A stretch of 64,000 bases of DNA, from contig BQFW01000003.1 of assembly GCA_020891255.1 (NCBI GenBank), positions 744,001 through 808,000 of the forward strand, written 5' to 3'. This document shows, one piece after another, positions 37,513 through 64,000 of the stretch (its first letter is position 1; the number at the start of each line of letters is the position of its first letter). The notes under the pieces were generated by a model that did no database searches, had not been told where the DNA came from, and saw nothing but the letters and a program-made list of their open reading frames with translations. A program made the position numbers and the translations under genes. The stretch is from Entomortierella parvispora E1425. Taxonomy: Eukaryota; Fungi; Mortierellomycota.

Positions 37513-39494
37513 ATGATGGCCAATAACGAACAAGTGAAGGCGGCCGCCGCCCTCGCCGCCGCTCAAGCCAAAAAGGCCGCTGAGCACAACACGGAAACCC
37601 TTCTTGAGCCCACGACCGCACCTACCAACGGAGGTGGACCCCTCGGACAACTCCAATCGACCTCTGCGACATCCTCCACCCATACCCTCGCCAGCGAGCA
37701 CTCACATCACTCCTCGACTCATTCGCATCAAACGGTCCTGCCTCATCACCCTCAACAGTCCCACCCGGGTATTCACCACAGGGCCTACCACCCCGATCCC
37801 GAGGTTCTTTATCACGACAGTGGAATCGACTACAACCATGTGTTGATGAACCGCAATGCCTCTGCTGCCAAGTGCTACGAAGATGCGTTGAGATACGAAC
37901 CTGGAACCATCATTTCATCCGCCGGAGCGTTGGTGACGAGCTCTGGCAAGAAGACTGGTCGTTCACCCAAGGACAAGCGTATTGTTGACGAGCCTAGCAC
38001 CAGCAACGATATCTGGTGGGGACCCGTCAACACAAAGTTGAGCGAGCACGCATTCTTGATCAACCACGAACGTGCAGTCGACTACCTGAACACGAGAGAG
38101 AGACTCTATGTCTTTGACGGTTACGCAGGTTGGGACCCCAAGTACCGGTAAGAAATCCATATTCTCTTCAGGAAGCTGGTAGTTGTTGGATCGGACCACT
38201 TGACTGACTTTTTAATTATTTTTTTTTGGCGATCTGCAGAATCAAGATCCGTGTGGTCTGTGCGCGTGCGTACCATTCGCTCTTCATGAGAAACATGTTG
38301 ATTCGCCCCACGGACGACGAACTCGAAGATTATGGTGAGCCTGATTTCACAATCCTCAACGCTGGTGCTTTCCCCGCCAACAGGTACACCACTGGAATGA
38401 CCTCCACCACTTCGGTCGCCATCAACTTCCGTCGAAAGGAGATGGTCATCCTGGGAACTGAGTATGCCGGAGAGATGAAGAAGGGTGTCTTCACCATCAT
38501 GCACTACCTCATGCCCAAGGCTGGGGTGCTCTCCTTGCACTCGTCTGCTAATCAGGGTGAGGATGGAGATGTGTCCCTCTTCTTTGGACTCTCGGGTACC
38601 GGCAAGACCACTCTCTCCGCTGACCCCCGTCGCCATTTGATCGGAGACGATGAGCACTGTTGGTCCGATACTGGTGTCTTCAACATTGAGGGAGGCTGCT
38701 ACGCAAAGTGTATTGATCTGACTGAGGAGAAGGAGCCCGAGATCTTTGGTGCTATTCGCTACGGAGCAGTGTTGGAGAATGTGGTTCTGGATGAGGACAC
38801 TCGACAGGTTGACTACAACGATTGCTCCTTGACCGAGAACACCCGCTGTGCTTACCCTATTGAGTACATCCCCAACGCGTTGATCCCTTGCATTGGAGGT
38901 CACCCCAAGAACATTATTCTCTTGACCTGTGATGCCTTTGGAGTCTTGCCTCCCGTCTCCAAACTGACTCCCGCCCAGGCCATGTACCACTTCATCTCGG
39001 GCTACACTGCCAAGATTGCAGGTACAGAGGAGGGTGTGACAGAGCCAGAGGCCACCTTCTCGGCCTGTTTCGGCCAACCGTTCTTGGTCTTGCATCCAAC
39101 AAAGTACGCGACCATGCTGGCCGAGAAGATTGAACAACACAAGAGTGATGTCTGGTTGATCAACACTGGCTGGAACGGTGGTGCCCATGGATCTGCCAAC
39201 GGATCCCGCATCTCCCTCAAGTACTCGCGGGCGATCATTGACGCGATCCATGCCGGAGAGCTCAAGGATGAGAACCAGGTCGAGTTTGTAAGGGACCCGG
39301 TCTTTGGATTGGCGATTCCTACCCGTGTCAGGAACGTGCCTGATCATGTCTTGAACCCCAAGCAGGCCTGGGGTCGAGAGACCGCGGCCTTTGATGCCAC
39401 GGTCAACAAGCTTGCAACCTTGTTCACGGCCAACTTTGAAAAGTTTAAGTCTGAGGCTTCAGAAGAGGTTCTCATGGCCGGTCCCAGGGTCTAA
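37513..39494 (+). CDS. PCK1: Phosphoenolpyruvate carboxykinase (ATP)
   Basis: Exons 37513-38147 and 38240-39494. Motifs [61 protein letters not shown] and FSACFGQPF. Confidence 0.98.
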
Positions 39495-41329
39495 GCCTAT
39501 CAAAATTAATCGTGTCAGCCCCTGCCATGGCTATCATAGAAAATAAAGAATAGAAAGAAAAAAAGCAAGATCTCGATGCTATGAAATGCCACCAAACCCG
39601 GGTTTTGACCTTCATTTCGAGATATCCAAACCGTATTGACCATGCTTTGTATCTATCTTTGTTTTCCCTGATCATAAATGACCGCCGTCCACAGGGTAGA
39701 AGCCGGATCTCACGCCAAAGGCATCTCTTCGAAAAGGCATCCTCTTCAGCATGCGAAGTGGGCAAAGTCCTTTTTCCTGACTGCCTTGTTGGCTTGTAGC
39801 GGTTCCCACGCAAACAAAAAAAGGAATGCTGCTAATTCGCATGCGACATGGTGAAATGCAACCACCTCCATCTGATCCTCCATTCTCGCAAGTTCCTGCA
39901 TTCATTGTCCATTCCATTCCACGACTCTGCGTCGCCGAGAACTTTAGAGACAGAGCTGGCACTTCATACCAGATGTTGGATGCTCTATTTCTCTCTCTCT
40001 TTCTCTCTCTCTCTCTGGCTTGTCAGCCAATCAGCGACTCGCAAGCCAGTTGTCATCGACAGTGCGTGAAAAGGACGGCCATTGTTACATGGCGAGAATG
40101 ACCCGGACGCACTCGATGGATGTCCGCTGCTTTTTTGTGTTTATCTGCTTCGCCTTTTCCCCCTTCTCTCTTTTTCGCTTCTCCTTCACCCCCACCCGCC
40201 CTTCCTCTCCCAGTCCACCACCACCATCACCACCACCACCACTCCCAGTCCATCTCCACCCACTATCCACCTTCACTTTCACACTCCACAGGGATCACGG
40301 TCCGTCCACGCCCATGACCCAAGGTTGCACCACACTCGCGTTAGTCTACATTCAGACACGAGAGCACAGCTCGCGCTTTTAAGGTATTTTGAAATCCAGC
40401 CAAACAAACACAGCCTGGCCATACACTTTGATCCCTTTCAGTCTCTGACGCCCCCTGCATGCTGCGTTCCTTTTCCCGTTCCCTCTTTTCTTTTGCAGCA
40501 CTGCCAGCCTGCGGGTAGCAGACCACGTTGCTTAGCCGAGTCTCGGTCGCTGTTCGTTTCGTTGCCACCTGTGCAAGCTGACTTTGTGAGGCGCAGGCCT
40601 TGCAGAGCGCCTCTCTGCCCTCCAAGGTCTTCAAGACTCTGCCTCCCTGGCAGATGGCTGTGCCCTTTGGAAAGAAGCTCTTTCCCTTTGGTACCTTCCG
40701 CACTTCAAGAACGTTTCTTGCCCAGAGTGGTCCGGGTTTGAGTGCAACCTCCCAAGCACACAAGTTCCACCTCTGAGCAAGCAAGGCCACGCTCCCTGCC
40801 TTCAAGACCAGCTGTGCCTCGGGGGACTCTACAGCAAGACCACTCTCTGGAGCATGCTCGGCCCTCTCAAGCCCTCTGCGTGCCACTCTTCCAAGGCGCC
40901 CTCCTCCAGAGCACCCTCCCTGGCTGTGCTTCCTGGCCGTGCCACTGCCCGTTTCGCGTTTGGGTCAACAACGAAAAGCAGTCCCACGTCCGCTGTGCCC
41001 CTTAAAATTGGCCAATCCGTCCTGGCCATCGACGCGTCTGTCCATCCATCTCTCCAAGGCCTGGGAGACAAGTGCGCGCCTTCCATCCAGTCAAGATTCT
41101 GTCAAGAGACCGCTGCCGCCTCCTTGCGGTGCCTTTCTCTTCAACGGCAGTCATCTCACGCCCTTGTCCGAGGACATGATGCCGCCAACAAGTTACACTG
41201 TGCCTGGTCGGTTGCCTAGAAGCTTGAAAAGGTACGAAAGTATGGCAGTAGGTAGCGCTTCGGGGCAAGGTGTCTGCAAGCGCCCATGCGGATTCAATGA
41301 TGAATTGGAGATCTCGAAGTGAGGGAAGT

Positions 41330-41960
41330 GGTCGTGGTCGTGGTTGTGGTTGTGGTGGGTTGTGAGTGGTGAGTGGGGAGTGGGGAGTGGTGAGGATTAT
41401 TACCCTGAGAATCATCTCTGCGGCGACCATTGTTACGGAAGACGATGGTGCCCTACCCTCGGGTAGCGTAATAGTGATCAGAGTAGGTTCAGTGAAGGGC
41501 TGGGGAGAATGAGAGGTGATAGTGGCATGGGTGATTCCGGAGAATTCGTCTCTGCGGCTGTCAACGTTCCGGAAGACGTTCGGGGGCCTCTTCCTACGAG
41601 GAGGTTAATAGTTGGAGGTGGTTCAACGAAGGACTCGGCTGGGGGGTTGGGAGTTGAAGAGAGGGATAGTGAGGGTGAGGGTGAGGGTGGGGGTGAGGGT
41701 GAGGGTGGGGGTGAGGGTGGGGGTGAGGGTGGGGGTGAGGGTGGTGTGGGGCATCTCCCTGAGAATCATCTCTGCGGCGACCATTGTTACGGAAGACGGT
41801 GGTGCCCTGCCCTCGGGTAGCGTAATAGTGATCAGAGTAGGTTCAATGAAGGATTCGGTTTGGGGGTGGAATTCAAGAGGGGAAGAGTGAGAGTGGTGTG
41901 GAGTATCTCTCTGAGAATAATATCTGCGGCATCAGAGATCAGCCGAGTCTTGACAACGTC
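41330..41960. repeat. Degenerate direct-repeat array with interspersed G-rich microsatellites
   Basis: A ~95 bp near-identical pair at ~41401-41497 and ~41757-41852 (ctgagaatcatctctgcggcgaccattgttacggaagacg..gatcagagtaggttca), with diverged copies at ~41540 and ~41905, and (GAGGGTGGGGGT)n at ~41669-41745. Confidence 0.9.
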
Positions 41961-42788
41961 CACTGACCATACTGGAGTCCTCTCCATTACGGATAGCAAA
42001 AAAATCAAGAAAGGCGGCCTTCCATCCAGTCAAGATCCTGCCCAGGCACTGCAGCCGCTTCTTTGCGATACCTTTGCAGTGCTGAAAGGAGGATTGTCAA
42101 CGCGTGGCAATAAGAGGTTCCCTCTCTTCAACGTCAGTCCTCCATTGACCACATACTGACCATTCCGCAAGTGGCAGACCTTTTATCACGAATAGGTGCG
42201 GCGACTTTCAAGCAAGTGGCCGGTCAACTCGTAGTCCTGTAGTTTTCTTTCACTTATATTAAACTGGTCATGAACATAACAGAAGCGCACTCAGAGAAGA
42301 AAAGATGACCGCGGACAACTGTTTCTCATTGCAAGACTGAGAAGGACGGTGGTGCTGGTGCTCCAAGGGAGCCAAAATATCAAAAAAAAAAAAATAAAAA
42401 AAAAACACCACTGGAGCCGCAGAAGGGATTCCAACTCAATCTCCCTTCGCCGATCGCCGATCCTTTTGTTTGGCATCCGGTATATGAAGGTGTGTATTTG
42501 CACCATGCGTCTCCCCCCACATCACAACCTCTGATCCACTGTTCTTTCAACTGAACATCTTTCCAAGCTCCTCTTCCTAAAACAACACTCCAAAAAAGAG
42601 GGACAGAATTTCTTTTTTTCAATGACCTTGCTATCGCTACCTTGCTATTGCTACCTTACTATCGCTGCTGCAGAACAATGAATGATTTTTGAGGTTCACA
42701 CAACTCACTCTCGTCCTTGATCCCATCGCCCCATCTCGTTGTGGCATATTCAGTTTGAGTGCCATTGATTCCATCATGCAGAAAAAAC

Positions 42789-43091
42789 ATGTCGCAGCTT
42801 GCCTTGAGCATGCTGCTGTTTGTCTTGTCTACATCGGTGTTGCACACGTGCGTGACGACCCAGCAGTCCGTGAGTGCAGGAGGGGCCGTGTCCGAGAACG
42901 AAGAGGACGATGAAGTTTGCAAGAGAGGTGCCAATGGGGCGCTGTATCGGCGAGGAGAGTGGTACCCGTTGTCGGGGCAACGCGAGTGCTTGTGGCGCTT
43001 GCAGCAAAAGAACAATGGAATTGTCTGTGTCGATGCTGCTGGAGACGCTTTGGTGGACGAGGTATTGTATAAATGTGACCGCACAGGCTAG
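42789..43091 (+). CDS. Putative small secreted cysteine-containing protein (100 aa)
   Basis: Hydrophobic N-terminus MSQLALSMLLFVLSTSVLHTCVT, an acidic patch, then C..Y..GEWY..C..NG.VC..C. Intronless ORF; no family confirmed. Confidence 0.5.
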   Translation: MSQLALSMLLFVLSTSVLHTCVTTQQSVSAGGAVSENEEDDEVCKRGANGALYRRGEWYPLSGQRECLWRLQQKNNGIVCVDAAGDALVDEVLYKCDRTG

Positions 43092-44850
43092 CAAAGGAAT
43101 GTAAAGAAGCCTCATTTTTTAATATAGGGGGGGGGGATGGTCCAACCATTGACTCCGTCAAGCGGTGGTTGCCGGAGGGGGATGTGGGGTTGGATGCGGC
43201 CGCCCGGGGTTCTAGTTGACTTTCTGGCCAAGGGTTTCGTCCATGACTGCAACAACATCGCGGCTGATGGTCATGGGGTAAGTCGGATAATTGGTATTTT
43301 GGGCCTGCCCGAGTAAGCTGCTGCAGGAAATGGCTCTGAAGCTATCATCCGTTAGATGATGACTGAATGCCTTCTAAGTCGGTTGTCCCAGAACGCGGCC
43401 ATTACGGTCTTTTTTTTCCTTCTGATATTGAACTGAATACGAATAGGACTTTGGTTCCTGAATCATATTTATTACGTGTTGGTACAGCTAGACTAATGAT
43501 GAGAATGGTATGCAAAGGATGATGGTACGAGGGGAGAGAGGGGGTATAAAAGGGGAAGTGAGGGAAATGCTAAAGTCAACCTGGAAAGAGGCACCAGCAC
43601 CTTTCTTTCGAGTCCTTGTGGAGACAGAGGGAAAAGACAGACATGCTGCACAAGACCAACAACACTCCACATATCTACGAATGGGTGTTTTTTTTTCAGC
43701 TCGGATGAGGTGCTCTCGTCCTCTTTCCAAAGATCTCAACACTCCTCCCCCCCAGAAAATCTGGAAAGGAGGGCACATTTGTTGATTTGTTGTTGTGCTG
43801 AAAATGGCTGAGGACTGGGGGAGGCGCTGGTTGACTGCTGACTGTTGACTGTCCGCTTGTGGTGGGGTGCCTTTGACTTGTATGAAAAGGATACAATGCA
43901 GTGTTTTTTTGGACCAAAAGAAGAAAAAAGAAAGGGTCCCCATCCCCTAAAAGAAAGGGAAAGCCAACCGGACAGATCCGGTGGCTCGATGATTCGTGGA
44001 CAATGAAAGAGGGAGAATGAAAAAAAAAAGATGCTCGGCTTGCAGAGAGAAAAAGACAAAAAATGCAATGCATGCATGTTGGCGCAGCGGACGACGAAAA
44101 CAAAAAGAAAAAAAAAATGCAAGTGAAAATGAGGGGGGAAAGAAAATTCGAGCATGGTCCAAGCGGAGACCAACCCTCTCAGGAGAACTCTGTTCTCCGC
44201 TGATTTTTGTCGGGAAGGAGCCAAAAAGAAATAAAGAAAGGGCCTGAACCACCCTTCACAGTAAAAAAAAAAAAAATTGTGACAGGATGGGGTCAAGATC
44301 CCCGGGTTTCCAGTATTTGCAAAAGATAATGGGTGAGGAAAGAGGGTCGAATTGAGTTCAGACAGGGTTCATGTTGTGGTCGATCGATCCTGTATCCAGA
44401 ATCGTCAGGGCTGGTCCTTGTGTCGCAACGTGGGTGATTGTGTCCTCCTTTGCTGTCAAGCTGAGATCCAACTGTGAATGGTATCCACTATCCAGTGTTG
44501 AACCATGGGCTATTATAACGATATAAAAAACAAGTTCAGTCAATGGGGTTACAATCGGCATCTTTGACCCGTTGAGTTCATACTCCGCACATTGTTGCCC
44601 TGTGAAAAAACAAAAGAGAGACGGGCTCGCGTCTGGACAGGGGGTAGGGCGACAGACTTACCGGCTGTTGTTTGGGCAACAAGGCCAAAAAATTGGCCAA
44701 CGGAACAAGGACAGAGACACGGGGAAGACAGGAGAGCATTTTGTCTCGACCTCATAAATCCGATGCAGACCAGACGAAACAAGAGACACAACCGAAACGC
44801 ACAGTTTAGACACGAACAGGAGGATGAGTAACGCGTCGAGATCACGTTCA

Positions 44851-45252: not shown

Positions 45253-45287
<35 letters not shown>

Positions 45288-46802
45288 AAACAAAAGGATA
45301 CCATGACGACCAACCCCAAAGTAAGTTCCGTCCACCTGTTCAAAAAGTCCTTGGGGTCAATGTTTTTTTTTTGTTCACTCTCTCTCTTCTCCCCCCCCAC
45401 ACGACAAAGGAACCATAAATATAAAAAAGGGGAGCGCAGGAAAGTAAAAAAGAAGGGACAGGGGGTAAAAGGATAATTGACTTGCAAAAGAATCCAACTT
45501 GAGCATACCATAGCGGAAAGGATCCTTTCTTCGGGGGAGATATCCTCTGGGCTTTAAGGGGGAGATGAGCTTGCGGGACCGAATCATTCTCAACTCGGAA
45601 GCCATCATGCGCAGATAGTCGGCGTTGGAACGAGTCTCGCGTGTTAAAAGATGGCGAGGAAGAGGCGGTGGCAGTAATGAACTGTCACGACGCTTATTGC
45701 TGCTGTCCTTTGGAGCAGTTGCGCAAGCAGCAGCGGGAGGAGCTAGAGTCCCCGTGGTCTTTGTAGCCTGGTTCTTAGTGTGGATAGTCACGGAAGACTG
45801 TGATCTAGGTCTGTCCACAACGGGTGTTTCCAGATACGTAAAGGTCTTTAGTGGGATCGTGTCCGAACGAGCCACCTTGAACTTGTCCATGGCGGCCACA
45901 GAGACTGGGTAAGAGACGGATCCGTAGTAGGATTGCATTGTCGATGTGGAAGATATGGAGGAGGCAAGGTTGGGTAAGGAGAGAGGCGCATCCGATAGAG
46001 TGAGGGGAGTAGCTCGTAGTGGGGTCGCATCGACAGCGGCAACGGGAGCGCTGTTGGCGACACGGAGTGCAGCTGGAGGCAGGAGAATGTGGGCTTCGGA
46101 ATTGGCGACGGAGCCTCTCCTTCGCTGCGAACGATCGTTGCCGGACCACGAAAAGGACGTCGTTGATGCTAGGTACTGGGCTTTGAGGTTGGCCCAGAAT
46201 CCCAAGCGGGAGGAGGACGTTGCCGATTCGGGAAGCAAAGATTGTAATGAATGGAACAACGGTTGGATAAAGTGGGATTCGCTACTTTCGTTGTTGCTGT
46301 TGCTGTTGGTGGTGGTGTTGTCGTTGATGCCCTTTGTCGTTGGCAGCAACTCGAGCGAGTTGCTAGAAGAAACAGGGGAAACGGGGGACGGTGGAGTGGA
46401 CGAGGAATTCCTTGAAGAGAGGGAGACCTTTGACACGCTGCCGGCAGCGCGGGCGGTGGGTCCTGTTCTCTTTTTTCGAGGAGGAATCACACCGTAGGGT
46501 TGGGGCGCGTTCGCAGTGAACTGGGCGATAAAGGCCTTGTAGTTGGCAGCATTGTTGAGAGGCGCGGGAGCTGGTTTGAACTGGGGTCTATTCCTTTGTG
46601 GGGCAGAGTGGACGGTCGCAGTTCTGGCAGGGAATGTGGACGTGTTTGATAATGAAGAGACAGGAGAGGGGGCAGAAGTAGCAAGGCCTTCAGGGGAAGC
46701 AATGTTGCTAGGGGCAGGGGCAGGGATGGTCGCACACAAGTCCAGGGAGTCCGGGTGCGGGTTCGAACAAGGAGAAGAGGAGGGTCGTATGAGCGACAGC
46801 AT
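44851..46802 (-). CDS. S/P-rich hypothetical protein with a compact C-terminal motif
   Basis: A long exon 46802-~45505 ends RETRSNADYLRMMASELRMIRSRKLISPLKPRGYLPRRKDPFRY. Donor GTATGC, acceptor TTTTAG at 45015, then an in-frame last exon AKSSLCEFVVPL..NEDYF*. Confidence 0.75.
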
Positions 46803-49781: not shown

Positions 49782-49815
<34 letters not shown>

Positions 49816-52800
49816 AAAATAAAGAAAGAGGTTAGAATCGTGTCATCACAATGTGGTTAGAGTAAAACATGGACAAGTGACAAAACATACGTTGAGCGAC
49901 TGCAGTAGGGGACACAATCGAAAGACGGACGAGGGTCAAATGGCAGAGCATCTTGATGTCGGGCTGATCCACCAAACCGACCAGAATACGATCAATAAAG
50001 GCAAAGATCTCGACTTTGTCGCGGCACTTCTCCAAGAGCGTGTACATGCACTCGAAGGCAGACTTGCGAATCTCAATACCGTCATCAACTCTGTGCTTGA
50101 AGGGTCCCATCTCTACAATGTGAATGAGCTCCTCCACAACAGCAGTCTCCTGGTAGAGCAGGGGCAGAAGCTGACCAAGAACATCGCGAATCAGATAAGG
50201 CTTGTTGTGTGCGGCCGAGTCAAGAGTCGTGAGAGACAAACGACGAACGTTCAGATCACTGTCCTTCATCAAGGACAAGAACTCGACAATCAAAGGACGA
50301 AGAAGCTCATCATAGCTTCGAGTGTTGTCCGTGAAAGTGTACTTGAATGCAGACACAACAGTACCACGGATCTGTGGAGAGCTTGATCGGAGGCGCTCCT
50401 GTAAAAGTCATGAAAACGATACCAAAAACGTCAGACTCTGCAGTGCATCACTTATTGTTAGACAGTCAAGAGCTCGTCTCATACCTGCAGTTCGGGCAAG
50501 AACTTGTAAGGGTTGGTGAGTGTCAGCTTTCCGAGACACTCTGCAACGACATTGCGTGTTCCTTCCTCCTTGCTCTCACAGTTGTCAAACAAAAGGGTCC
50601 TATGTGGCAAAGAAGGGCAAAAAATAGGTTAGTAACACTGACCTCACTCTTTGTCAAGACAGCAGGGTCATCTCCAAAGTTGACCACGAACCAGATTTCC
50701 GAAGCGTGAGCCTCCAGTTCCTGACTGCCTTGCTTCTGGGTGTAACGAGTAATGACCTCCTTGAGAGCATGCAACAACAAGTAACGCTTCTTGGGGTCAT
50801 TTTGAATCTCCTGCATGATAATAGGGACGTATACGCCAACGTTACCAGCACTCACGTTACCTAATTGCAATAAGTGAAATAGATGTCAGACAAAACTCAG
50901 TAGCACACAGTTATCTGTTATAGGTCTCCAGCAATAGTTACCAATAGCAAAGGCAGCGGCAGATCGGACCTCCTCCGAGTGCACATTGAACATTGCCAGG
51001 ATGGACGTATGAAGAGTGGCATGACCTGTCAATGACACGCGACGACCAATCTCTCCCAGCGTGATCAAGGCAAGGTACTTTTGAGAGTCAGTGGTGCGTG
51101 CATCCTCGATCTTGTGCACAAACTCAGAAACAGTTGCGTTGGCGTTCCTATCCGAGTTCAAACACAAGACGGCGATACATTGGGCAATGGTGGAGAAAGC
51201 TTGCTTGGAAAGAGCGAGCTGCCCATCGCGAGGAGGAGCATTGGCGGGTTCCAAGAGGCCGTTGATAAGAGTCTGGAACTCCTTGTCGTTGGTGCGCACA
51301 AGGGCAGCAAAGAGTGCCAACAAAGAGTCAAGGGCCTGTCCTTGGATCAAAGGAGACTTGACCAATTGGAGGACCGAAGGCAGGATCTCCTGCTTGACGA
51401 CATTGATGCTGGTGGGGTTGGCGTGAAGAATAGAAACAACGGACGTAAGACCAAGAGGCAGCAGGTGAAGGTCCTCTTCAGAGATCAAAGGCTTCAGCTC
51501 GTTCAAAAGCTCGTCATAAGTCGAAGCGGGCAAAACCTTGCCGAATCTACCAAAGAGTGACAGGAAAGGGTTAATATCAAGCACACACTGGCATCCTTTT
51601 GCTTGCCATCAGTGATCCATAATTGTAGGAGCACCAACGTTACCTTCGAATGGAAACATCCAAAAAGTGAAGACTGGCAACCTTGAGGGGGCGGTTGCTC
51701 TTTCTCAACAGCGAGGCAACCTCAGGAACAGCCTGCAAAATGGGCGCCTTGATTTCAGCGTCACCACATACAGGGCTCTCTACAATCTGAGAAAGGGTCT
51801 TGACAGCCATCAGACGAGTAAGCTCGTTTTGAAGCTTCTCAAGTAGCAGGGGCAAACTGTTGGCCAGCTCGACCCTGAGCTCATCACCTACACGGGAGAG
51901 CAATACTCCCAAACAGAGGATACTGCGCTCCTTGACCTCCTGATCAGCATCTGCAGTTGAAACGCGCTGCAAGATAACATTGTAGATATTGAGGACATGG
52001 GGCTTGGCCTCAGCTCCCAAGGGGCCGTACGAGTAGTTCTGAGCATCCTCGTCAAAGGTCATGTGACGAATGACCTTGATGAGCTCCATGCAACAGATCA
52101 ACGCCTCGGAGGAAATCTTGTAAAACTTGTCCTGAATGGCGGTAATAACGGGAGGGCAGAGTGCATCCAAATGACCCTGGAAGACCTCTGGGGGATGGGT
52201 CCTGAACAGGCTGCGAAGGAATCCCAGGGCCTCAATCTTCAAGTTGGAGTTGGTGGCCAAGTGGTGGTCGTGCTGAGCAGATGCAGTGAGTGACTGACGG
52301 ACTGAGGGAACAAAGAGCATGTAGCTGTTCTCCAATCCACCCCTCAAAACCGTCACCAGTTCCTTCAGCAGGACGAATCCCGAAACACGCGTCTGGAGAG
52401 ACTTTGAGGACGCCTTTGATAACATTTGCTTGGACAGGTTCTTGGTGAGGCGAGGAACTTGGCTGCGAAGCAGGGCTTTTGGACTAGATAAAGCATATTG
52501 TGTTAACATAAACCGTGATGCGGGTAGGGTGGCTACATTTTGAATGATCTTTTCCTTGATTCATCCGTTGTTACCTTTGATCGGTCTCAATAGGAGTTCC
52601 AGGACGGCTGCCTTTGCGCTTCTTGGTGATACTCTCGACGCTGAGATCCACTTCATACTCTGCGCCACCATATGTGTTTGTCTGACGGAGAAGAGTGATG
52701 AAAGTCTGAAGAATTTCGATCCGCACAGTTTCTTCACGTTCCTTGAAGCGGTTGATAAGAGACGGGGCGATGGTAGAGTAGAGCTGTCCAAGAAGGTCCT

Positions 52801-54453
52801 GGCGAGTACCAATAATGGCGGCAAGCAGTTTTGCAGATGTACGACGGACTTTCCATGACATGTCATCATCATCCGAATAGTCGCTATGAGAAAGATTCCA
52901 GAAATGATAAGCATTTGCCCAAGTGAAAATCATATAGCCTTGTCCACTCTTACCCATCATCATCGTCCTCATCTTCATCCTCATCGTCAGAATCCATCTT
53001 TTCGTCTTCATCTTCGTCCTCATCCTCGCCATCATCGTAGTTGGGGTCATAGCGAAGGAACTTGAGTCCAAGACTAATGATGGTGTCAATGAAAGGCGTG
53101 ATTTCAGAGGGGCAACGAAGCACGAAAGACTCCAAGGACTGGAGAGCGCTCTCACGAAGTTCGTCGTCTTCCAAGTCCATGTATTTGATAATTGTAGGGG
53201 CAGTGCTACCCAAAAACTTTCCGAATCTTGGTGCATTAGCTCGACTAGAAAACAAATTGCGAAAGTTAGTAAAGCTTATGCAGAAAGAGCGCGGAAAACG
53301 GCCTTGTTGGTCATAAAACCTGAATCGTACCTGATGGTTCCAGTGGCTTGAATATAGGTTCTAAGGCGTTCGGTCGAGTTCTTTGAGGTTTCCAGTCCGG
53401 CGAGAATCTTCTTCATCAAGTCATCAAAGATGTCATCTGGTACGTGGGCGACAAGGTTTCCAATGGCCATCGAAGCTCTCTTGCGCAAAGCGGGGCGAGA
53501 GTGACTGAGAAGGGCAAAGAGGGTATTGGCGGTTGGTTTTTGGAAATTGGTTGTGGCAAGGATGTTTCCGAATCTGAAGAGAACCTCGCTCAAAATGTCC
53601 AGAGCATCCATTTGGGCATCATAGCTTGAGTTTGCCTAGAGATCGAGGCTAGGTGTTAGTATATCTGTGGTGGCTGGACAGAGTTGCACTACGAGACAAA
53701 GACGGCTTGAAAATAGAGGCCATACACTCTCCAACTGGGACAAAAGACGAGGAACAAGGCGCTTGCAAACATTGACAGCGACGACGGAATTGACGGGAAC
53801 TTGAACAATAACGGTCTTCAGACCGATGCTGGCAATTTCCCGCAAGTCTTCCTTGTCCTGAGAAATGAACCCACAGAGACTATCGACGATCTGTTGAAGC
53901 TGGTTCTCCTGGACTTTTTTCACAAGAGGACCAAGACTAAGGAGAGAATTAAATAAAAAAAAAAAAAAGAGTTGGTCAAACAAAGCTTCACTTGCGCCGC
54001 CTTCCTGCGCCCCCAACCAGCCTTTTCTTTTTTTTTTTTTTTTTTTTTTTTTTTTGTGAAAACGCATGTTTTGGCTCGTACCATTTAACGGCAATGTTCT
54101 GCACTTCGCCGTTTTTGTCCTTCATGAGGAGCAAGATCTTGTCGACAATCTTCTTCTCCGTGTTCTCTTCAATGTTGAAGGAGGGGTTCTGCAACTCGGT
54201 GATGAGATCATTGGTGGCCATGAAACGGAAGTCTGCGTCGTCCGAGTTCATCTATATGCATGCAAACAGATTGGACGAGTCAGTCCGCCAGTTTTCGTTT
54301 CCTTTGGGAGGAGGGGAAGGGCAGGTGTGATAGCCACAGAAAAGACGGTGGCGGCAAAGGTAAACAGAGGAGGGGGGAGGGGGCCGCAGCAGTTGGCGGA
54401 AGGTTTACCTTCTCCAGCAGGGTGCCGACCAGGTACGCGCTTGAGTTTGACAT
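49483..54453 (-). CDS. CAND1: Cullin-associated NEDD8-dissociated protein 1 (TIP120)
   Basis: [15 protein letters not shown]|[89 protein letters not shown] and [26 protein letters not shown]. About 12 introns. Confidence 0.97.
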
Positions 54454-55238
54454 GGTGTCTTTGGTCTGAGTAGAGTAGAGGATAGAGACAGTGAAGAAAG
54501 AAAGGAAGGAAGGAAAGAGAAGGAGCAGAAAAGAGAAAAGAAAAGAAGCAGAGGGTAGGGTGACAAGAGAACAGAGTGTGGGAATGAAAGAATGAATGAA
54601 ATGAATGAAAGAATAAAAGAAAGAAAGATGAGGCAGTGTCCAAGTCAAAGTCGTGTCAAGGACCCAGAAAGAAAGAAGCGAAAAGAAAAAAAAAAAAAAA
54701 AAAAAAAAAAAGGCACGCGTCCCATCCCATCGCATCGCATCAGTCCCCCTTGCCTTCCCTTCCCCGAGACAAGAAGGACACACGGGCAGGGCAGCCAGAT
54801 AACGCCACCAATTTTTGTGGCTCCTGCTGACGTCGCTCGCTGTCGCAGTCACGTTTCTCTCTCCTTGGGCTGATTCCAGCAGGGGACACGTCCACGTCCA
54901 CTTCCCAAGAGAGGCGTGCTTTGCCCAGTTGTGTGTCCTGTCCTGTCCTTGTCCTGTCCTTGCCCTGTCCTTGCCCTGTCCTCCCTTTGGGCGTCCCACC
55001 TGCGTTTCTTGTGTCCCTTTGTGTCTCTTTGCGTCTCTTGCATCCCTTTCGTCTCTTGCATCCCCCTTCTCTCATTGGCGTCCTTCTCATTCCTTCCTGC
55101 TCGTACTCTTTCATCACTTTGTTTTTCTCCTTGCTGTGCTTTGCTGCACACTCCTCCACTCGCTCATTCACTCTCCCGACTGCACCCACCGCGCTTTCTC
55201 TCAAACGACCCAACCACGGCCAAGGAACAAAAACACGT

Positions 55239-58715: not shown

Positions 58716-58749
<34 letters not shown>

Positions 58750-58909
58750 GAATACTGACGCCTGACCACCTTTGACGATGGATGAGATTTTCTAGGCGCA
58801 AGAGGACGAAGTGTTCAATGGCTTGGAAGGATCCACGGCCTGCTTTTGTGTCTATGTTCGTAACAATGCACTAGATGTTGTCCAGACTATTGCACGGTCC
58901 ATCGCGTAG
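55239..58909 (+). CDS. UBP2: Ubiquitin carboxyl-terminal hydrolase, Ubp2-like (N-terminal Cys/His-rich and PUB-like regions)
   Basis: Cys box [39 protein letters not shown], His box [22 protein letters not shown], and [10 protein letters not shown]-terminal CCQTC..HHLH..ECCHC. Confidence 0.9.
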
Positions 58910-59829
58910 GGCCCCCACAGCTGCTTCTCGGTGCCGTCATTCTCACCATTGGTCCAACACGTAATAAACATGGTGCAGCGACCAAGATCCTATTCGTATT
59001 CAATAAAACATAAAAATGAAAAGGCAATGGTCGCGTTCTCGAGCGACAAACTCAAAGGCATTCAGTCATTCGTAATTCGATGGATGCTAGCTTCAGAGCC
59101 ACTGCCTGCCCAAGCAGATCCCAAAAATACCAAACTATCCAAATAAAGTGTTGCTCGTAGCCTTCAAAAAACGAGGCAAGGCGCTGAATTGTCGTCTCTG
59201 CACGACGGCCCCAGGTTTCCAGACGACTTTTGGGCGTCTTCCTGCTCATACTTTCAATGCGAAAACAGCTGTCCATGATTTGAATATTACCGGTTTCTCT
59301 TCTCTGAGGGCACTTCAGTTATGTTCATGACCAGTTTGATGTAAATGAAAGAAAACTACGGGACTATGAGTTGACTAGCCACTTGCTTGAAAGTCGCCGC
59401 ACCGATTCGCGATAAAAGGATTGCCGCTTGCGTAAGGTAAGCTCGGACCAACAGCTGTACGCAAGACTTCAATCCCTCTATTTGAGTGTATCTTCCGCAC
59501 GCGTGTAATTTGAATTGCAGCGCTGAAAAAAATGGATCGTTACTTGGGATTGGATTTAACGATTCTTTATTTCCAGCCCCTACTTCAAAGGTCTTGACGC
59601 GCATTTGTTTGACCGCTGCAATCATTTTCCAACCACTTGCCACTCCCACTTCTCTTCATGCACCTCTACATTCACCGCACATTACCCTTATTCCAGCTGC
59701 CACTGTTTATATTGCAGAACAAGGTAACTATAATTGTTCGCCACGAGCGCGATGTCGAGTAGATTCATGAGAAAATCACCCAATCTTCCCTCAAGCTCTT
59801 GCTGCTCCGCTCTCATGAACTCTACAAAT

Positions 59830-60175
59830 CCTAATGTGCCATCGGGCTGCAGGAGAAGACATCTAGATGTACTGTTGTCGTCCGGGCAGGTACATCCCGC
59901 TCGTGATTTATATATCGCGTTGGCTGTTTCGTATTTTTTTTTTTTTTTTTTTTTTTTTTGGATTTGAGATCAAGTGTGCTTGGTAGGGGTGTGACGAGAA
60001 TGCTATTATTTTCTCTGTTGCTACACTCCTGATGTGCCACCGGGCTGCGGGAGGGTTTGACAAGAATGTTGCCAGCTTCTCTGATCCTTGTACTCCTGAT
60101 GTGTCAACCGGGCTGCAGGAGATGCCACCTTTGTGCACTGTTGTCGTCCCGGCAGGTGCATCACAGGTGTAGCAT
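59830..60175. repeat. Three degenerate direct copies of a tgatgtgcca(c)cgggctgcagg..ctgttgtcgtccgggcagg unit
   Basis: Copies start at ~59832, ~60027 (truncated) and ~60093. Confidence 0.8.
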
Positions 60176-60929
60176 CGAGTGGACTACTGTCACCGGACAG
60201 TTACACTCGCGAGGTTTGAATGTTTGCGTGAGTGTTGCAGTAGATTAATGTAGATCATCTCCCTTGCTTGGGGACTCTAGATCACCTGAGAAGCACTGCA
60301 CTCGAACATCAGTGCGCCATGTCTGCAAGAATGAGGGCGAGGCACGCAGGGTGGTTTGGCTGCGGGACAGGAGGTATTTGGGGAGGTGACAGGCAGAGGC
60401 ACATCGGACAGGCGACGCACTTGGGAACGGGCAAGGGGAGCCATCGTAGGCGAGATCAATGAGGAAAAAAAGGAACAAGAAGTCAATGTAAAGGAACGCC
60501 CAGTATATGGGAGAGCTTGACATGCAAACTGGAAAAGTGGAAGGAAATAGTTGAGTTGGGAACCACTGCAAGCCAGCAAAGCAGTCAGGAAGAAGGTCTT
60601 TGCCCATTTCGCATGCTGAAGAGGATGCCTTTTCGAAGAGATGCCTTTGGTGTGAGATCCAGCTTTTACCCTATAGAACAGAGGGTCATTTTTGAACGAG
60701 AGGAATCAAGGATAGTGGAGAGAGAGACACAAAACATGGTCAATACTGTTTGGGTATCTCGAGATGAAGGCCAAATGCTGGGTTTGGTGATTTCTAAACG
60801 ATGGCTGCAACAGCCTGCTTGGAGGTATTCTATGGTGAAAAACAAATGGTGCGGTCCTTAAAGTTCAGTAGCCTGTGGCTCTCGATGCACATCTTCAAGA
60901 AACCGTTCCAGGACTTTTAGACTTGTAGC

Positions 60930-61104
60930 TCTCCTGCATCCTCGGTTCCCAAAATGACCATCTTTCGACGGAGGTTGACAGCGACTGAGGTGGCGAATCA
61001 ACATGAGTCGTTTGAAGAGCGAGTGGCAAGCACGCGCACAGACCTCACGGATCTTGATTCTGCAGATCCCCAAAAAAAATGGACGTGCCTGAAACTGATC
61101 TTAC
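60930..61104 (-). pseudogene. PCK1 pseudogene fragment (intron remnant plus pieces of exon 2)
   Basis: The minus strand reads GTAAGA..TTTTTGGGGATCTGCAG|AATCAAGATCCGTGAGGTCTGTGCGCGTGC.., translating as RIKIREVCARACHSLF against PCK1 [16 protein letters not shown]. It then jumps to the [14 protein letters not shown] region with a frameshift. Confidence 0.9.
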
Positions 61105-61548
61105 CTTTCATTCTCCCTTTCATTGTCCACGAATCATGAATCTCTGCCAGTTTGTTTTCCTTTTCTTTTGGGAGGAGGACGGTGAACGTGGCTCTTTTCC
61201 TGCAAATCACTGCATCGTATCATTTCCACCGTTAACAGACCATTGCAGCACAATAACAAATAGGCCTCCTTGCCAGGTTTTCTGGAGGGAGGAGTGCTGA
61301 GAGCATCGGAAAGCGGACGAGAGTACATCATTAGAGCCCACAGATAGGTGCAGGATCGATCTTACGCGTTTGCCCTGTCTTGGCCTTTCCATTTTCACAA
61401 GGGTCCAAAGAGGGGTTCCTTATCCTTTGTCCAGATTCTCTTTAGCATCACTTTCAAAGGGCGTGTTCCTTCAGATATGGCAATAAAGTTTTTCTTTCTT
61501 TCTTTTTATTCTATTGTGCTTTAATCTCTCGAATCCAGTGTACTTCAT

Positions 61549-64000
61549 TTACGCACTGGCAATGCTTCCATTCAGCGTAAACCATTGACTACGGCACTCG
61601 ACAGCCTCTCTTCTGACAAGGCGCTTCCTGTCATCCAAGGATTTCTCCAACTCCTTCAACACCTGTGACTTGTAAGGGCGAAGGGCAGTGAATGGCAAGG
61701 ACTTTGGCTGGGCACCCAAGCACTTGAGAGCCGCCATCCTGACCTTCATTGTGTTGGCAGGATCTTGAGCGCTGGTCAGACTGATGAGGAGGGGTGTCAA
61801 GGTCGAAAGGTGGTCCGCCATCAATCCAGGAGCATCCTTGGTAATGATCTGGAATGTCTCGATCGTCGATGACTTGAGCTCTGGGTCGGGGAACGACAGC
61901 GAGTGAACAAGCATTGGCAGCAGCTAAATTTACAGAAGAAATCAGTGTCAATGGATTTTTTGTGGCACAGTCGAGGAACCGATCCCTTTTTTTTAAAGAC
62001 TTACAGGTGGAAGCTCAGTCAAGAGAACTTGCTTGGGGATATTCCTCAAGACATGCGAGAGGGCAATCAAGAAGTTATGACGCACTTCATCCTTTGAACT
62101 CTCAAAGCCCTTGACAAGGACAGGGATACAGTAGTTGAAGAACCTTTGCTTGTACAAGAGCTAGAAATTGCAGAAATTTAAAATCAAAGAACGCGGTCAG
62201 ATCTAAAAAAAATGATATGAGAAAGCGAGAAAAAAAGAGGTGATAGTTTCAACTTACGCGAAGGACAGCAAAGGTTTCCTTGGTCAACACATCACGCTGC
62301 TCGCCAATGACAAGGTTGAAGCCATCCGCTGCAATCTTGCCCAACCTTGGTACTGCGAAGATGTTCATCAACTCGCCCGTCATGTCATAGCCGAGGCTGT
62401 TGGTGCTCAACACCAAGGCCTTGGTGATCCAGGTGTACATGATCAAAGCAGCCTCGCGGGCCTCGAAGGAGGCCTGCTCCTGTCGAATGATCAAATGAAG
62501 CTCTGGGATTAAGGTCTGACCAATGAACGACTCGAGCACATTGGCCTTGTTATACTTGTTGAGAATAGTCGCCACAGCCTTGGACAAAGCCGTGCGTTGG
62601 GTAACATTGGCAGTCTTGATCGCCACCTCAACCAAAGAGCCTGTGAACTGCTGGAGATTTTCGACGGGCAATGTTGTTTGCTGACGGCAGCCATCAATAA
62701 CAGTGGAAAAAAGGGTAGCGGTGTTTTGTTGAGAGACTCTGCCAATCGCGCTCAATGGACTAAAGGCGACATCGCCTGCGTTTGCCTGGTAGGCTGGTAC
62801 GATGGCGAGGTCTCCGTGGACAAAGATATTGAAAATGGACTTCACAAACTCGTTTTGGGCGCTAATTAGGTTAATTGGCAATAAAAGTCAGAAACGAGCA
62901 AGTATTCCGCTTTTTGAAAACATCTCCACATTGAAGTATACAAAAAACACTTACGCAGTTTCGACATGAACCATCACCACACGGGTAATGCCAGCAACGA
63001 CCTCCAGGATTTCTGCATTCTTCATGATATGGTCGGCATCATCCTGAGTCAAGGTTGGTGCAATGCACTTGCCGATCAGCTGTGGGACCAAGTTGCTCAA
63101 ATATTGCGGGAGATCAGCATGCTTGCGCTCGGCCTTGGATCGGAGAAGAACCAAGAGTGTTGTAAGCAAGGCAATGGGGTAAGTGGTGCTGGATCCGTTA
63201 AAGTCGGCAGAAACCTGGTCAATCTTTTCCAGAACCTGGGGCACAACATCGGCAAAGAGTGTAGGTTCCATGCCGATCTTGGTCACAGCGTTCAGAATAT
63301 ACTCGGGGCTCTTTCGTTGCACAACAGTGTCGACCTCCATGTCGTTCTGAGTGGTGGGGAGCATCTCAAAGAAAGCGGGCAAAGCCATCGATCGGACAAC
63401 CCCTGGCATGATCAAAGCCAATGAGGCCAAAGACTCCAATGCAGTCTCCCTACGATTGTGAGCACATTTTAGTACTGAATAACGACAAAAAGCAAAGCGG
63501 AGCAAACTCCCAAGTTCTTACTGCAACTCTGAGTCTGGATCCTCCAGGACGATACGAACAAAATATTGAACGGCGTATGAAATCTCTGTCTCTGAGAGGA
63601 ACTCGCGGAGCAAAATCATTCCATGCAGGCCCTTCACTCCAGCAAGTCTCAACGCGTTGTACTCGTTCGATGAAAGGAGAGCATTGGTGAAAAGCTCAAA
63701 GAAGCGATCCTTAAACGTCAAAAGAGGGGTAACAAAGTCGGAATCGTCTAAATATTTTTAAAGTGTCCCAATACAGATTCATGTTAGTTTGAGGGACCGG
63801 CACCCAAGATATCCAGCAACTCGATGGACTTACGTTCGGTGGGCTGTCCAGCGGTTCCATAGAGCACACGACTCGCCTCCAAAAAGTCGAGGAGGACATC
63901 CAGCAACGCCTTCTTCCGCGTGGATTGTTCGCTGGTTGTATACTGGGAGAGGAGAGTGGGGATCGTCGCAAGGGTAATCGCAGTGCAAGCAGGATCTATG
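61549..64000 (-). CDS. MMS19: MMS19/Met18 cytosolic Fe-S assembly scaffold, 3' part (5' end outside the window)
   Basis: HEAT-repeat exons ending KVRMAALKCL..LRPYKSQVLKELEKSLDDRKRLVRREAVECRSQWFTL, the MMS19 C-terminal signature. Confidence 0.9.

What the first reader, a model, noticed from the sequence alone, without database searches (positions are those of the whole stretch)
58928..61453. Circularly permuted inverted duplication: likely footprint of a reintegrated ~5.9 kb DNA circle
The gap between the convergent UBP2 and MMS19 stops is built from sequence found 15-20 kb upstream, all in inverted orientation. Left to right, the copy maps to source 43530->43285, 42340->42160, 39808->39590 and 38475->38148 (PCK1 exon 2 and intron), then jumps to 44022->43555. 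The source order is C-B-A|D, so the left end (43530) and right end (43555) of the copy are neighbours in the source, and the source extremes (38148 and 44022) are joined inside the copy. That is the arrangement expected if 38148-44022 was excised or copied as a circle, opened at ~43540 and inserted at 58.9 kb. Circular-intermediate duplications are described in yeast wine strains, cichlids and cattle; I know of none reported for this lineage (inference). The best blocks are about 88-93% identical by eye (e.g. 7 mismatches in 94 nt at 60557-60650) with large deletions, so the event is old. A copy across a transient tandem-duplication junction would give the same order.
Basis: partly seen in the sequence, partly recalled or inferred. 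Interest (0 to 1): 0.88.

Follow-up and report, generated by a model that had tools for sequence, protein, structure and literature searches.

The report
Rotated, inverted copy of PCK1 neighbourhood
A soil fungus of the Mortierella family carries, between two unrelated genes, an old and decayed backwards copy of a 5.9 kb stretch lying 15-20 kb away; its pieces are in the rotated order expected if the copied DNA passed through a ring, and the copy now gives rise to a spliced non-coding RNA.

Summary
Seven inverted blocks at 58938-61448 match 38147-44022 (60-202 bits; best of 30 shuffles 28). Their order is rotated. The copy's outer ends (43507, 43567) lie 59 nt apart in the source, and the source extremes meet at 61105/61106.

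The insertion is derived. Mortierella claussenii keeps CAND1-UBP2-MMS19 with 183 nt between the convergent stops. A closer relative, seen in two metagenomes, has 276 nt. The window has 2640 nt.

DNA unitigs and an RNA contig support the assembly, including the inner junction. Divergence fits an event after the split from that relative: K2P 0.25-0.32 in unconstrained blocks against 0.40-0.42 in introns between the species.

New here:
- The inner junction lies within 1 nt of the PCK1 intron-1 5' splice site.
- The stretches between blocks (17, 134, 1115 and 99 nt) have no source homology.
- A spliced + strand transcript (59644-59723, 60281-61340), apparently non-coding, runs antisense to the PCK1 pieces.
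- UBP2 now uses an AATAAA inside the insert.

Best reading: a one-off insertional duplication through a circular intermediate, a kind known in human, cattle and yeast. Whether the ring was DNA or RNA was not tested. A third partial copy elsewhere in the genome is not excluded.

The parts
38147..44022 (+). Source segment: the last base of PCK1 exon 1, intron 1, exon 2, and 4.5 kb of ORF-poor but transcribed DNA downstream of PCK1. Blocks are A 38147-38474, B 39583-39808, C1 42156-42346, C2 43285-43507 and D 43567-44022.
   Evidence: blocks. (PEPCK; intron 38148-38239). (no credible ORF in 39.8-45.3 kb). (the RNA run X2 holds 47% of the words of 39850-45000).
43508..43566 (+). 59 nt of source missing from the copy. 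This is where the ring was opened, or where copying began and ended. It is purine-rich, starts with GTATGC and holds TATAAAAG at 43545-43552.
   Evidence: No homology to either flank of the copy.
58938..59140 (-). Block C2 of the copy (source 43507-43285, 79% over aligned columns). Its first 49 nt now serve as the UBP2 3' UTR, with AATAAA at 58963-58968.
   Evidence: The UBP2 mRNA contig ends at 58986. Sequence read.
59240..59441 (-). Block C1 of the copy (source 42346-42156, 85%).
59442..60556 (.). 1115 nt with no counterpart in the source gap 39809-42155. It holds exon 1 and the intron of the new transcript, a T26 run, and three copies of a short palindromic motif (59829-59896, about 60020-60050, 60094-60162).
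   Evidence: alignment scores at shuffle level. (local repeat). (loose ends show that 59468-59530 resembles another place in the genome).
60557..60794 (-). Block B of the copy (source 39808-39583, just past the PCK1 AATAAA; 87%, with a 43-nt perfect run at 60608-60650).
   Evidence: The 43-mer unitig has depth 248 against 66-79 for its flanks.
60929..61105 (-). Block A of the copy: PCK1 intron 1 (donor GT at 61104-61103, intron shortened from 92 to 45 nt) plus two pieces of exon 2. A 99-nt deletion between CCAC microhomologies separates the exon pieces. Conserved residues are replaced, so this is a pseudogene fragment.
   Evidence: It is closer to the window's PCK1 (81-89%) than to the M. claussenii orthologue (73-76%).
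61105..61106 (.). Circle-closing junction. An A-run at source 44020-44029 (three As kept) is joined to G + GTAAGA of PCK1 intron 1, so it lies within 1 nt of the 5' splice site.
   Evidence: The join is spanned without differences by DNA unitig X1 record 7 and by RNA contig X2 record 10.
61106..61448 (-). Block D of the copy (source 44022-43883 and 43792-43567; 70% and 65% by BLAST).
59644..61340 (+). Spliced transcript: exon 1 59644-59723, GT..AG intron 59724-60280 (557 nt), exon 2 60281-61340. The longest ATG ORF is 82 aa. It is antisense to the PCK1-derived blocks A and B and runs into D.
   Evidence: X2 record 10, depth 17.3 against 17 for UBP2, adapters at both ends. (splice sites and ORFs).
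61449..61548 (-). Native spacer and MMS19 3' UTR that survived the insertion. 61466-61548 aligns to the relative's spacer.
   Evidence: The MMS19 mRNA contig ends at 61509.

Best explanation
After this Mortierellaceae lineage split from its nearest sampled relative, one copy of the 5.9 kb segment 38147-44022 entered the short spacer between the convergent UBP2 and MMS19 genes, about 15-20 kb away on the same chromosome, in inverted orientation. The segment runs from the PCK1 intron-1 donor to an A-run in the non-coding DNA downstream.

The copy passed through, or was templated on, a circular form of the segment. The ring joined 44022 to 38147/8 and was opened or entered at 43508-43566, which gives the order C-B-A|D. 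The ring was most likely double-stranded DNA, either an extrachromosomal circle or a unit popped out of a transient tandem duplication. It was either ligated into a break or used as a template during break repair.

The copy has since drifted neutrally. It now keeps about 1.25 kb of recognisable source in seven blocks, mixed with about 1.35 kb of unrelated DNA.

It was then put to secondary use. It supplies the UBP2 polyadenylation signal. It also carries a spliced, apparently non-coding transcript that is antisense to the PCK1 fragments.

Shown here: the topology, the direction of copying, the relative age, the soundness of the assembly, and the transcription. Inferred: the ring itself, its chemical nature, and whether the losses happened at insertion or later.
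For: - Block order, orientation and significance.
- The outer ends are 59 nt apart in the source and the source extremes are joined at 61105/61106.
- The D|A join is derived, because the PCK1 exon 1-intron 1 boundary is shared with M. claussenii, M. antarctica and Podila.
- Empty site: 183 nt between the stops in M. claussenii with the same CAND1-UBP2-MMS19 order, and 276 nt in a closer relative from two independent metagenomes, against 2640 nt here.
- Dating is coherent. K2P is 0.25-0.32 in the unconstrained blocks C2 and D, and 0.12-0.15 where the source is constrained (A, B). Both are below the 0.40-0.42 of MMS19 introns between the window and the relative.
- The PCK1 pieces are closer to this genome's PCK1 than to orthologues, and they have lost coding constraint.
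- Assembly: X1 unitigs match with 0 differences and break only at homopolymers and the shared 43-mer. An RNA contig spans B-A-D.
- The same A-B to B-A signature is the published criterion for circle-mediated duplications: PMC7188851 and PMC7450558.
Against: - No circle was observed. The topology is equally produced by copying once around any circular template, including RNA, or by a linear insertion followed by a swap of two adjacent blocks.
- The junction falls within 1 nt of a 5' splice site. That is about 3 chances in 5900 for a random DNA break.
- There is no clear microhomology at the junction beyond one G.
- The inter-block stretches in the copy are unrelated to the source. 'Insertion then deletion' therefore needs extra insertions, or the copy was a mosaic from the outset.
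- Unitig depths at block B (109, 168 and 248 against about 70) hint at a further copy elsewhere. Two short stretches, 59253-59288 and 59468-59530, resemble other loci.
- The rest of the genome could not be scanned.
Confidence: 0.55

Rival explanations
1. RNA ring. A rare read-through PCK1 transcript was spliced from the intron-1 donor (38148) to a cryptic acceptor just past 44030 (TTGCAG at 44040-44045). This released a 5.9 kb lariat whose 5' G was bonded to an A of the run at 44020-44029. A retroelement reverse transcriptase copied once around the loop, starting and stopping near 43508-43566 and reading across the 2'-5' branch. The cDNA was captured at a break between UBP2 and MMS19.
For: - The junction is [A-run]|G GTAAGA, exactly the form of a lariat branch read-through. 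The single ambiguous G could be a misread branch A.
- Intron 1 is retained, as expected if its donor was used for the larger splice.
- One turn around a closed template explains the unit length.
- 47% of the region downstream of PCK1 is represented in RNA.
- cDNAs of circular RNAs are known to become pseudogenes (PMC4897178).
Against: - A 5.9 kb intron would be about 60 times the usual intron length seen here (80-560 nt).
- PCK1 has an AATAAA at 39542-39547 that should end most transcripts.
- The sequence before the A-run (AATGA) is a poor match to the CTGAC-type branch sites seen in this genome's introns.
- There is no poly(A) tail and no target-site duplication.
- The strand of the downstream transcription is unknown.
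- No other internal deletion has GT..AG ends.
Confidence: 0.15
2. Replicative patchwork. During repair of a break in the UBP2/MMS19 spacer, a polymerase switched templates repeatedly (MMBIR/FoSTeS type). It copied 70-460 bp pieces from the nearby PCK1 region and from other loci. No complete 5.9 kb copy ever existed at the site.
For: - The copy is a chain of short source blocks separated by 17, 134, 1115 and 99 nt of DNA with no homology to the intervening source.
- At least two of the non-source or poorly matching stretches resemble other places in the genome (loose ends and record 3).
- Donor and acceptor are only 15-20 kb apart.
Against: - All seven blocks keep one orientation and strict order around the ring.
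- The chain ends 59 nt from where it began. Free template switching does not predict this, unless the template was itself a ring, which merges this rival with the best explanation, as argued in PMC7450558.
- Block divergence follows source constraint as expected for ordinary decay of one old copy.
- The 99-nt loss inside exon 2 has CCAC microhomology typical of a later deletion.
Confidence: 0.15
3. Linear inverted insertion of 38147-44022, followed by a second local event in the copy that moved block D from one end to the other. One route would be tandem duplication of the insert and loss of the outer halves.
For: Swapping two adjacent blocks gives the same final order, and the copy has clearly suffered several later indels.
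Against: It needs more events. It also requires the original insert to have ended exactly at the PCK1 splice donor and at the A-run, and then to have been cut again at 43508-43566. No trace of a second unit remains.
Confidence: 0.1
4. The blocks belong to a dispersed repeat or mobile-element family, and the resemblance between the two loci is a by-product.
For: The 43-mer in block B has about three times single-copy unitig depth, and short matches to other contigs exist.
Against: - One block is a piece of the single-copy, conserved PCK1 gene with its intron.
- There are no terminal repeats, no target duplication and no transposase or reverse transcriptase ORF.
- There are no further copies in the 64 kb.
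- Five source intervals are kept in order.
- None of the blocks is present in relatives' PCK1 flanks.
Confidence: 0.05

Closest known systems
Circle-mediated (eccDNA-type) insertional duplications: human A-B to B-A segmental duplications (Takahashi & Innan 2020, PMC7188851; Chicote et al. 2020, PMC7450558); cattle colour-sidedness KIT translocations (summarised in PMC12235870)
   Same: The duplicate sits at a distant site. Its two parts are in reversed order but in the same relative orientation. The copy's outer ends are neighbours in the donor, and the donor extremes are joined inside the copy. The donor locus is left intact.
   Different: This one is far smaller (5.9 kb against tens to hundreds of kb). 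It is intrachromosomal, only 15-20 kb away, and inverted. It is old and heavily eroded, with unrelated filler between blocks. Its junction lies at a splice donor. It is in an early-diverging fungus (Mortierellomycota), for which a full-text search returned no paper with both 'Mortierella' and 'extrachromosomal circular DNA'.
circRNA-derived pseudogenes (Dong et al. 2016, PMC4897178)
   Same: A non-collinear junction in a genomic copy, taken as the footprint of a circular RNA template that was reverse-transcribed and inserted.
   Different: Those junctions are back-splice joins (exon end to exon start) and the copies lack introns. Here intron 1 is retained, the join is intron 5' end to an A-run (lariat-like, not back-splice), and most of the copied DNA lies beyond the gene's polyadenylation signal.
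Templated insertions by replicative template switching (MMBIR/FoSTeS, chromoanasynthesis-like events)
   Same: Short pieces copied from nearby DNA are stitched together at a break site with little or no junctional homology, interleaved with DNA from elsewhere.
   Different: The pieces here keep one orientation and a strict cyclic order, closing to within 59 nt of the start.
Pseudogene-derived antisense non-coding RNAs (established knowledge, mainly from animals)
   Same: A decayed fragment of a gene, inserted in inverse orientation relative to local transcription, is transcribed into RNA complementary to the parent mRNA.
   Different: Only about 130 nt of mature PCK1 coding sequence is covered, at 81-89% identity. 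The longest perfect match inside the mature mRNA is about 14-15 nt. The 43-nt perfect run lies past the PCK1 AATAAA. No effect on PCK1 was tested.

Membership tests
Circle-mediated insertional duplication (A-B to B-A type) | Two or more donor blocks appear at the acceptor in cyclically rotated order with the same relative orientation | tested here: met
   Order C2-C1-B-A|D, all inverted.
Circle-mediated insertional duplication (A-B to B-A type) | The outer ends of the copy are adjacent in the donor, and the donor extremes are joined inside the copy | tested here: met
   The ends map to 43507 and 43567, 59 nt apart. 44022 is joined to 38147/8 at 61105/61106.
Circle-mediated insertional duplication (A-B to B-A type) | The acceptor copy is derived: outgroups have an empty site and the donor has the ancestral arrangement | tested here: met
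   Spacers of 183 nt and 276 nt in relatives with the same gene order. The PCK1 intron position is ancestral.
Circle-mediated insertional duplication (A-B to B-A type) | Breakpoints show only microhomology or short indels, with no long repeats | tested here: inconclusive
   At most one shared G at the inner junction. The outer junctions are blurred by age, and only 61466-61548 aligns to the relative's spacer.
Circle-mediated insertional duplication (A-B to B-A type) | Physical existence of the circle (Circle-seq, outward PCR) | not testable with these tools
   The event is ancient, so only a living strain could show whether the region still circularises.
circRNA-derived or processed retrocopy | Introns removed, junction at exon-exon (back-splice) boundaries, and a poly(A) tail or target-site duplication for processed copies | tested here: not met
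   Intron 1 is retained with both splice sites. The junction is intron start to A-run. There is no poly(A) at either end and no duplication of the flanks.
Lariat-derived cDNA copy (hypothetical kind) | Junction of the intron's first G to a branch-site A lying 10-40 nt before a usable acceptor | tested here: inconclusive
   The 5' splice-site side is met to within 1 nt. There is an A-run with TTGCAG 10-25 nt downstream, but the branch consensus is poor and no RNA evidence for such a splice could be obtained.
Transposable element or dispersed repeat | Terminal repeats or other element ends, target-site duplication, element-encoded enzyme, multiple copies | tested here: not met
   None of these within the window. 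Genome-wide copy number could not be tested; unitig depth hints at one more copy of part of block B.
Known structured RNA genes (for example snoRNA clusters) as the reason for island-like conservation | A match to a curated RNA family | tested here: not met
   No Rfam hit at gathering threshold and no tRNA in the whole window. The blocks are not conserved in relatives.

The most novel reading that the evidence does not exclude
The copy is the cDNA of a giant intron lariat. A read-through PCK1 transcript was spliced from the intron-1 donor to a cryptic acceptor 5.9 kb downstream. The lariat loop was reverse-transcribed once around, across the branch, and captured at a chromosome break. This would make it a 'lariat-derived pseudogene', a kind of retrocopy I have not seen described, and a natural record of reverse transcription across a 2'-5' branch in a fungus. 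A second, independent novelty is that the resulting antisense transcript may now modulate PCK1.
Probability: 0.12. Interest if true: 0.85.

Novelty: new member of a known kind. Interest (0 to 1): 0.45.

Why it matters
Rotated duplicates are among the few lasting footprints of circular intermediates in genome evolution. The well-documented cases are large and come from mammals and yeasts.

This case is small and datable, in an early-diverging fungal lineage. It has a demonstrated empty site in relatives, so polarity and rough age are not in doubt.

It also shows what becomes of such an insert. It turned a spacer of about 200-300 nt between two convergent genes into 2.6 kb. It donated a polyadenylation signal to one neighbour. 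It acquired its own spliced transcript.

The position of the ring-closing junction at a splice donor gives a concrete, testable way to ask whether some 'circle' duplications are in fact RNA-derived.

It remains a single, eroded event, so its general importance is modest unless more cases are found in the genome.

Tried and rejected
- **Chance similarity.** Rejected by shuffles.
- **Misassembly.** Rejected as far as the data go. X1 unitigs match exactly and break only at T26/T30 runs and the shared 43-mer, and an RNA contig spans B-A-D. X1 may be the data the assembly was made from, so it is not fully independent.
- **Structured RNA genes as the cause of island-like conservation.** No Rfam or tRNA hit, and no conservation of blocks B, C or D next to PCK1 in M. 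antarctica, Podila minutissima or M. claussenii.
- **Remnant of an old PCK1 paralogue.** Rejected. The fragments are closer to this genome's PCK1 than to orthologues, and they include intron and downstream non-coding DNA.
- **RIP-like mutation.** The substitution spectrum is symmetric, with 91 transitions and 71 transversions and no C-to-T excess.
- **Spliced RNA intermediate behind the internal losses.** No GT..AG at the gap boundaries. The 99-nt loss has CCAC microhomology.
- **Residual homology in the inter-block stretches.** None.
- **Block D as native MMS19 downstream DNA retro-copied to the PCK1 side** (suggested by the A-run after 44019). Rejected, because the relatives' spacers are too short or show no homology to D.
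- **Protein-coding potential.** No credible ORF in the new transcript or in the source interval.
- **Searches that gave nothing.** The 32-mer from block B in metagenome contigs. Contig L008 was not a close relative. The Logan contig with a 91%-identical PCK1 could not be read. The scan's notes by words and by sequence were blank.
- **Distant relatives.** Two more distant MMS19 loci (L004, L006) have different neighbours and were uninformative.
Full report
**1. What is there**

The window comes from a member of the Mortierellaceae. The PEPCK encoded at 37513-39494 has its best named matches, 82-85% identical, in Mortierella antarctica, Podila and M. claussenii.

Genes on the right half of the window:
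- PCK1 on the + strand, with its intron at 38148-38239.
- A conserved gene of unknown function at 45375-47464 (-).
- CAND1 (-).
- A UCH-domain UBP2-like gene on the + strand, with its stop at 58906-58908.
- MMS19 on the - strand, with its stop at 61549-61551.

The 2640 nt between the two convergent stops is the subject of the finding.

**2.

blastn of the spacer against the window, a whole-window self-comparison and a word-7 search with shuffles give seven inverted blocks:

| Copy | Source | Block |
|---|---|---|
| 58938-59140 | 43507-43285 | C2 |
| 59240-59441 | 42346-42156 | C1 |
| 60557-60794 | 39808-39583 | B |
| 60929-60993 | 38474-38407 | A |
| 60992-61079 | 38307-38220 | A |
| 61106-61228 | 44022-43883 | D |
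| 61246-61448 | 43792-43567 | D |

Positions 61080-61105 are a shortened 5' part of PCK1 intron 1, including its GGTAAG donor.

Scores are 60-202 bits. The best of 30 shuffles reached 28.3 bits. These are the only sizeable repeats in the 64 kb apart from two local ones.

Identity over aligned columns is 89, 87, 85, 79 and 74% for A, B, C1, C2 and D2, and 82% overall.

The copy's outer ends correspond to 43507 and 43567, which are 59 nt apart. The source extremes are joined at 61105/61106.

**3. Assembly**

Run X1 is genomic. Its unitigs lie on the stretch with no differences. They break only at the T30 and T26 runs and at a 43-nt word shared perfectly by source and copy.
- Record 2 spans the left end of the insert.
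- Record 7 spans B, A, the inner junction, D and the right end into MMS19.

Run X2 is evidently RNA, because four UBP2 and MMS19 introns are skipped with GT..AG ends. One of its contigs covers 60281-61340 without a difference, and therefore the inner junction too.

Both runs come from the sample that may have given the assembly, so this supports the assembly but is not independent of it.

**4. Direction and age**

The join of PCK1 exon 1 to intron 1 is shared with M. claussenii, M. antarctica and Podila minutissima. The D|A join in the spacer is therefore the derived one.

The PCK1 pieces in the spacer are closer to this genome's PCK1 (81-89%) than to the orthologue (73-76%). They carry replacements at conserved residues.

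Relatives have an empty site:
- The M. claussenii contig that also carries PCK1 has CAND1, UBP2 and MMS19 in the same order and orientation, with 183 nt between the stops.
- A closer relative (MMS19 coding DNA 81-83% identical), present in an ENA and a JGI metagenome, has 276 nt.
- Of that spacer, only the MMS19-proximal part aligns to the window, at 61466-61548.

Divergence agrees with this:
- K2P between source and copy is 0.25-0.32 in blocks where neither copy is expected to be constrained (C2, D).
- It is 0.12-0.15 where the source is coding or lies just past the gene (A, B). That is about half, as expected if only the copy drifts there.
- MMS19 introns differ by 0.40-0.42 between the window and the closer relative.

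The insertion is therefore younger than that split but old. The substitution spectrum is symmetric, with no RIP-like bias.

**5. Details that bear on mechanism**

(a) The inner junction reads [..GAGAATG AAA] G [GTAAGA..]. The left part ends in the A-run at 44020-44029. The right part is the first base of PCK1 intron 1, preceded by one G that could be the last base of exon 1. A random break would fall this close to the donor about 3 times in 5900.

(b) The 59 nt missing at the opening point are purine-rich, contain TATAAAAG (43545-43552) and begin with GTATGC.

(c) The stretches between blocks in the copy (17, 134, 1115 and 99 nt) show no homology to the source intervals they replace (90, 1108, 2347 and 938 nt). 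Alignment scores are at shuffle level. The 134-nt stretch cannot be diverged PCK1 exon, since that exon is conserved in the source.

(d) One internal loss, 99 nt of exon 2, is flanked by CCAC microhomology. No gap has GT..AG ends.

(e) Unitig depths at block B hint that part of B has a further copy elsewhere. Source-type unitigs have depth 109 and 168, and the shared 43-mer has 248, against 63-79 for the copy's own unitigs. In addition, 59253-59288 and 59468-59530 resemble other contigs.

**6. What the insert does now**

The UBP2 mRNA contig ends at 58986. That is 18 nt after an AATAAA (58963-58968) lying inside block C2, so UBP2 now terminates in inserted DNA.

A separate RNA contig, with depth equal to that of UBP2, lies on 59644-59723 and 60281-61340. 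It has a 557-nt GT..AG intron on the + strand. Its longest ATG ORF is 82 aa and nothing looks coding.

Because the insert is inverted, this RNA is antisense to the PCK1 intron and exon pieces and to block B. Complementarity to mature PCK1 mRNA is short and imperfect. The 43-nt perfect run lies beyond the PCK1 AATAAA (39542-39547).

A regulatory role is possible, but there is no evidence for it. The divergence pattern in paragraph 4 needs no selection on the copy.

The source interval downstream of PCK1 is also about half represented in the RNA run, although it has no credible ORF.

**7. Explanations**

The cyclic order, the single orientation and the closure to within 59 nt are most simply produced by one passage around a circular form of 38147-44022. 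I take a DNA circle as the best reading (0.55). It could have been cut and ligated, or used as a repair template. This is the criterion used for human circle-mediated duplications (PMC7188851 and PMC7450558). A unit popped out of a transient tandem duplication is one way to make such a circle.

Rivals:
- **Lariat-derived cDNA (0.15).** It uniquely predicts the junction at the splice donor, but it needs a 5.9 kb intron, read-through of a good polyadenylation signal, and a poor branch site.
- **Template-switching patchwork (0.15).** It explains the unrelated filler, but not the closure, unless the template was itself a ring.
- **Linear insertion followed by a block swap (0.10).**
- **Repeat family (0.05).**

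circRNA-derived pseudogenes (PMC4897178) are the nearest RNA precedent, but their defining features are not met here.

**8. Verdict**

The finding is a real feature and was correctly described. It is a new example, in Mortierellomycota, of a known kind of rearrangement. It comes with a demonstrated empty site, a coherent date and two secondary uses of the inserted DNA.

The nature of the ring is open. The splice-donor junction makes the DNA-versus-RNA question testable. Interest is moderate.

Noticed in passing
window 59644-59723 and 60281-61340 (+): A spliced transcript with no credible ORF lies between UBP2 and MMS19, expressed at about the level of UBP2 in the RNA run. It has a 557-nt GT..AG intron, long for this genome (the other introns seen are 80-101 nt).
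   Followed up: partly
window 60608-60650 and 39720-39762: A 43-nt perfect match between copy and source sits inside blocks that are otherwise 13% diverged. Its genomic unitig depth is 248 against about 70 for single copy, and the source-type flanking unitigs are at 109 and 168. Either part of block B has a third copy elsewhere, or the source region is over-represented in the sequenced culture.
   Followed up: no
window 59253-59288 and 59468-59530: Genomic unitigs from other loci match these short stretches at 90% or more, then run on into unlike sequence. One is a 3307-nt single-copy contig. Parts of the spacer therefore have relatives elsewhere in the genome.
   Followed up: no
window 59829-59896, about 60020-60050, 60094-60162: Three copies of a short motif with palindromic ends (CTCCTG..CAGGAG around CCGGGCTGCAGG) flank a T26 run inside the intron of the new transcript. 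This may be a small foldback element or a local duplication.
   Followed up: no
window 39850-45000: The 5.9 kb between the convergent PCK1 and the gene at 45375-47464 has no credible ORF, yet 47% of its sampled words are present in the RNA run. Relatives also keep a 2.4-3.2 kb gene-free gap here. An unannotated non-coding transcription unit is likely, possibly driven by the TATAAAAG at 43545.
   Followed up: partly
window 41078-41498 vs 41675-42075: A local direct duplication (about 82% identical) in a G+C-rich stretch with GTGAGG x12 and GTGGTGA x6 tandem repeats, inside the part of the source that has no counterpart in the copy.
   Followed up: no
window 58719-58748, 59934-59959, 45254-45295, 49785-49827, 54023-54055, 54681-54711: Pure A or T runs of 26-43 nt recur in introns and spacers. 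They break the short-read unitigs and cross-match each other in every similarity search.
   Followed up: no
L001 (Podila minutissima contig JAAAUY010000077.1): The 61 kb contig ends 93 nt after the PCK1 stop. The DNA just downstream of PCK1 may be hard to assemble in that species too.
   Followed up: no
one search hit list: Several Mortierellaceae (Linnemannia zychae, Podila clonocystis, Actinomortierella wolfii) list two or three distinct PEPCK proteins. Many PEPCKs are mislabelled 'Protein kinase C-like 1' in NCBI records, apparently from confusing the gene names PCK1 and PKC1.
   Followed up: no
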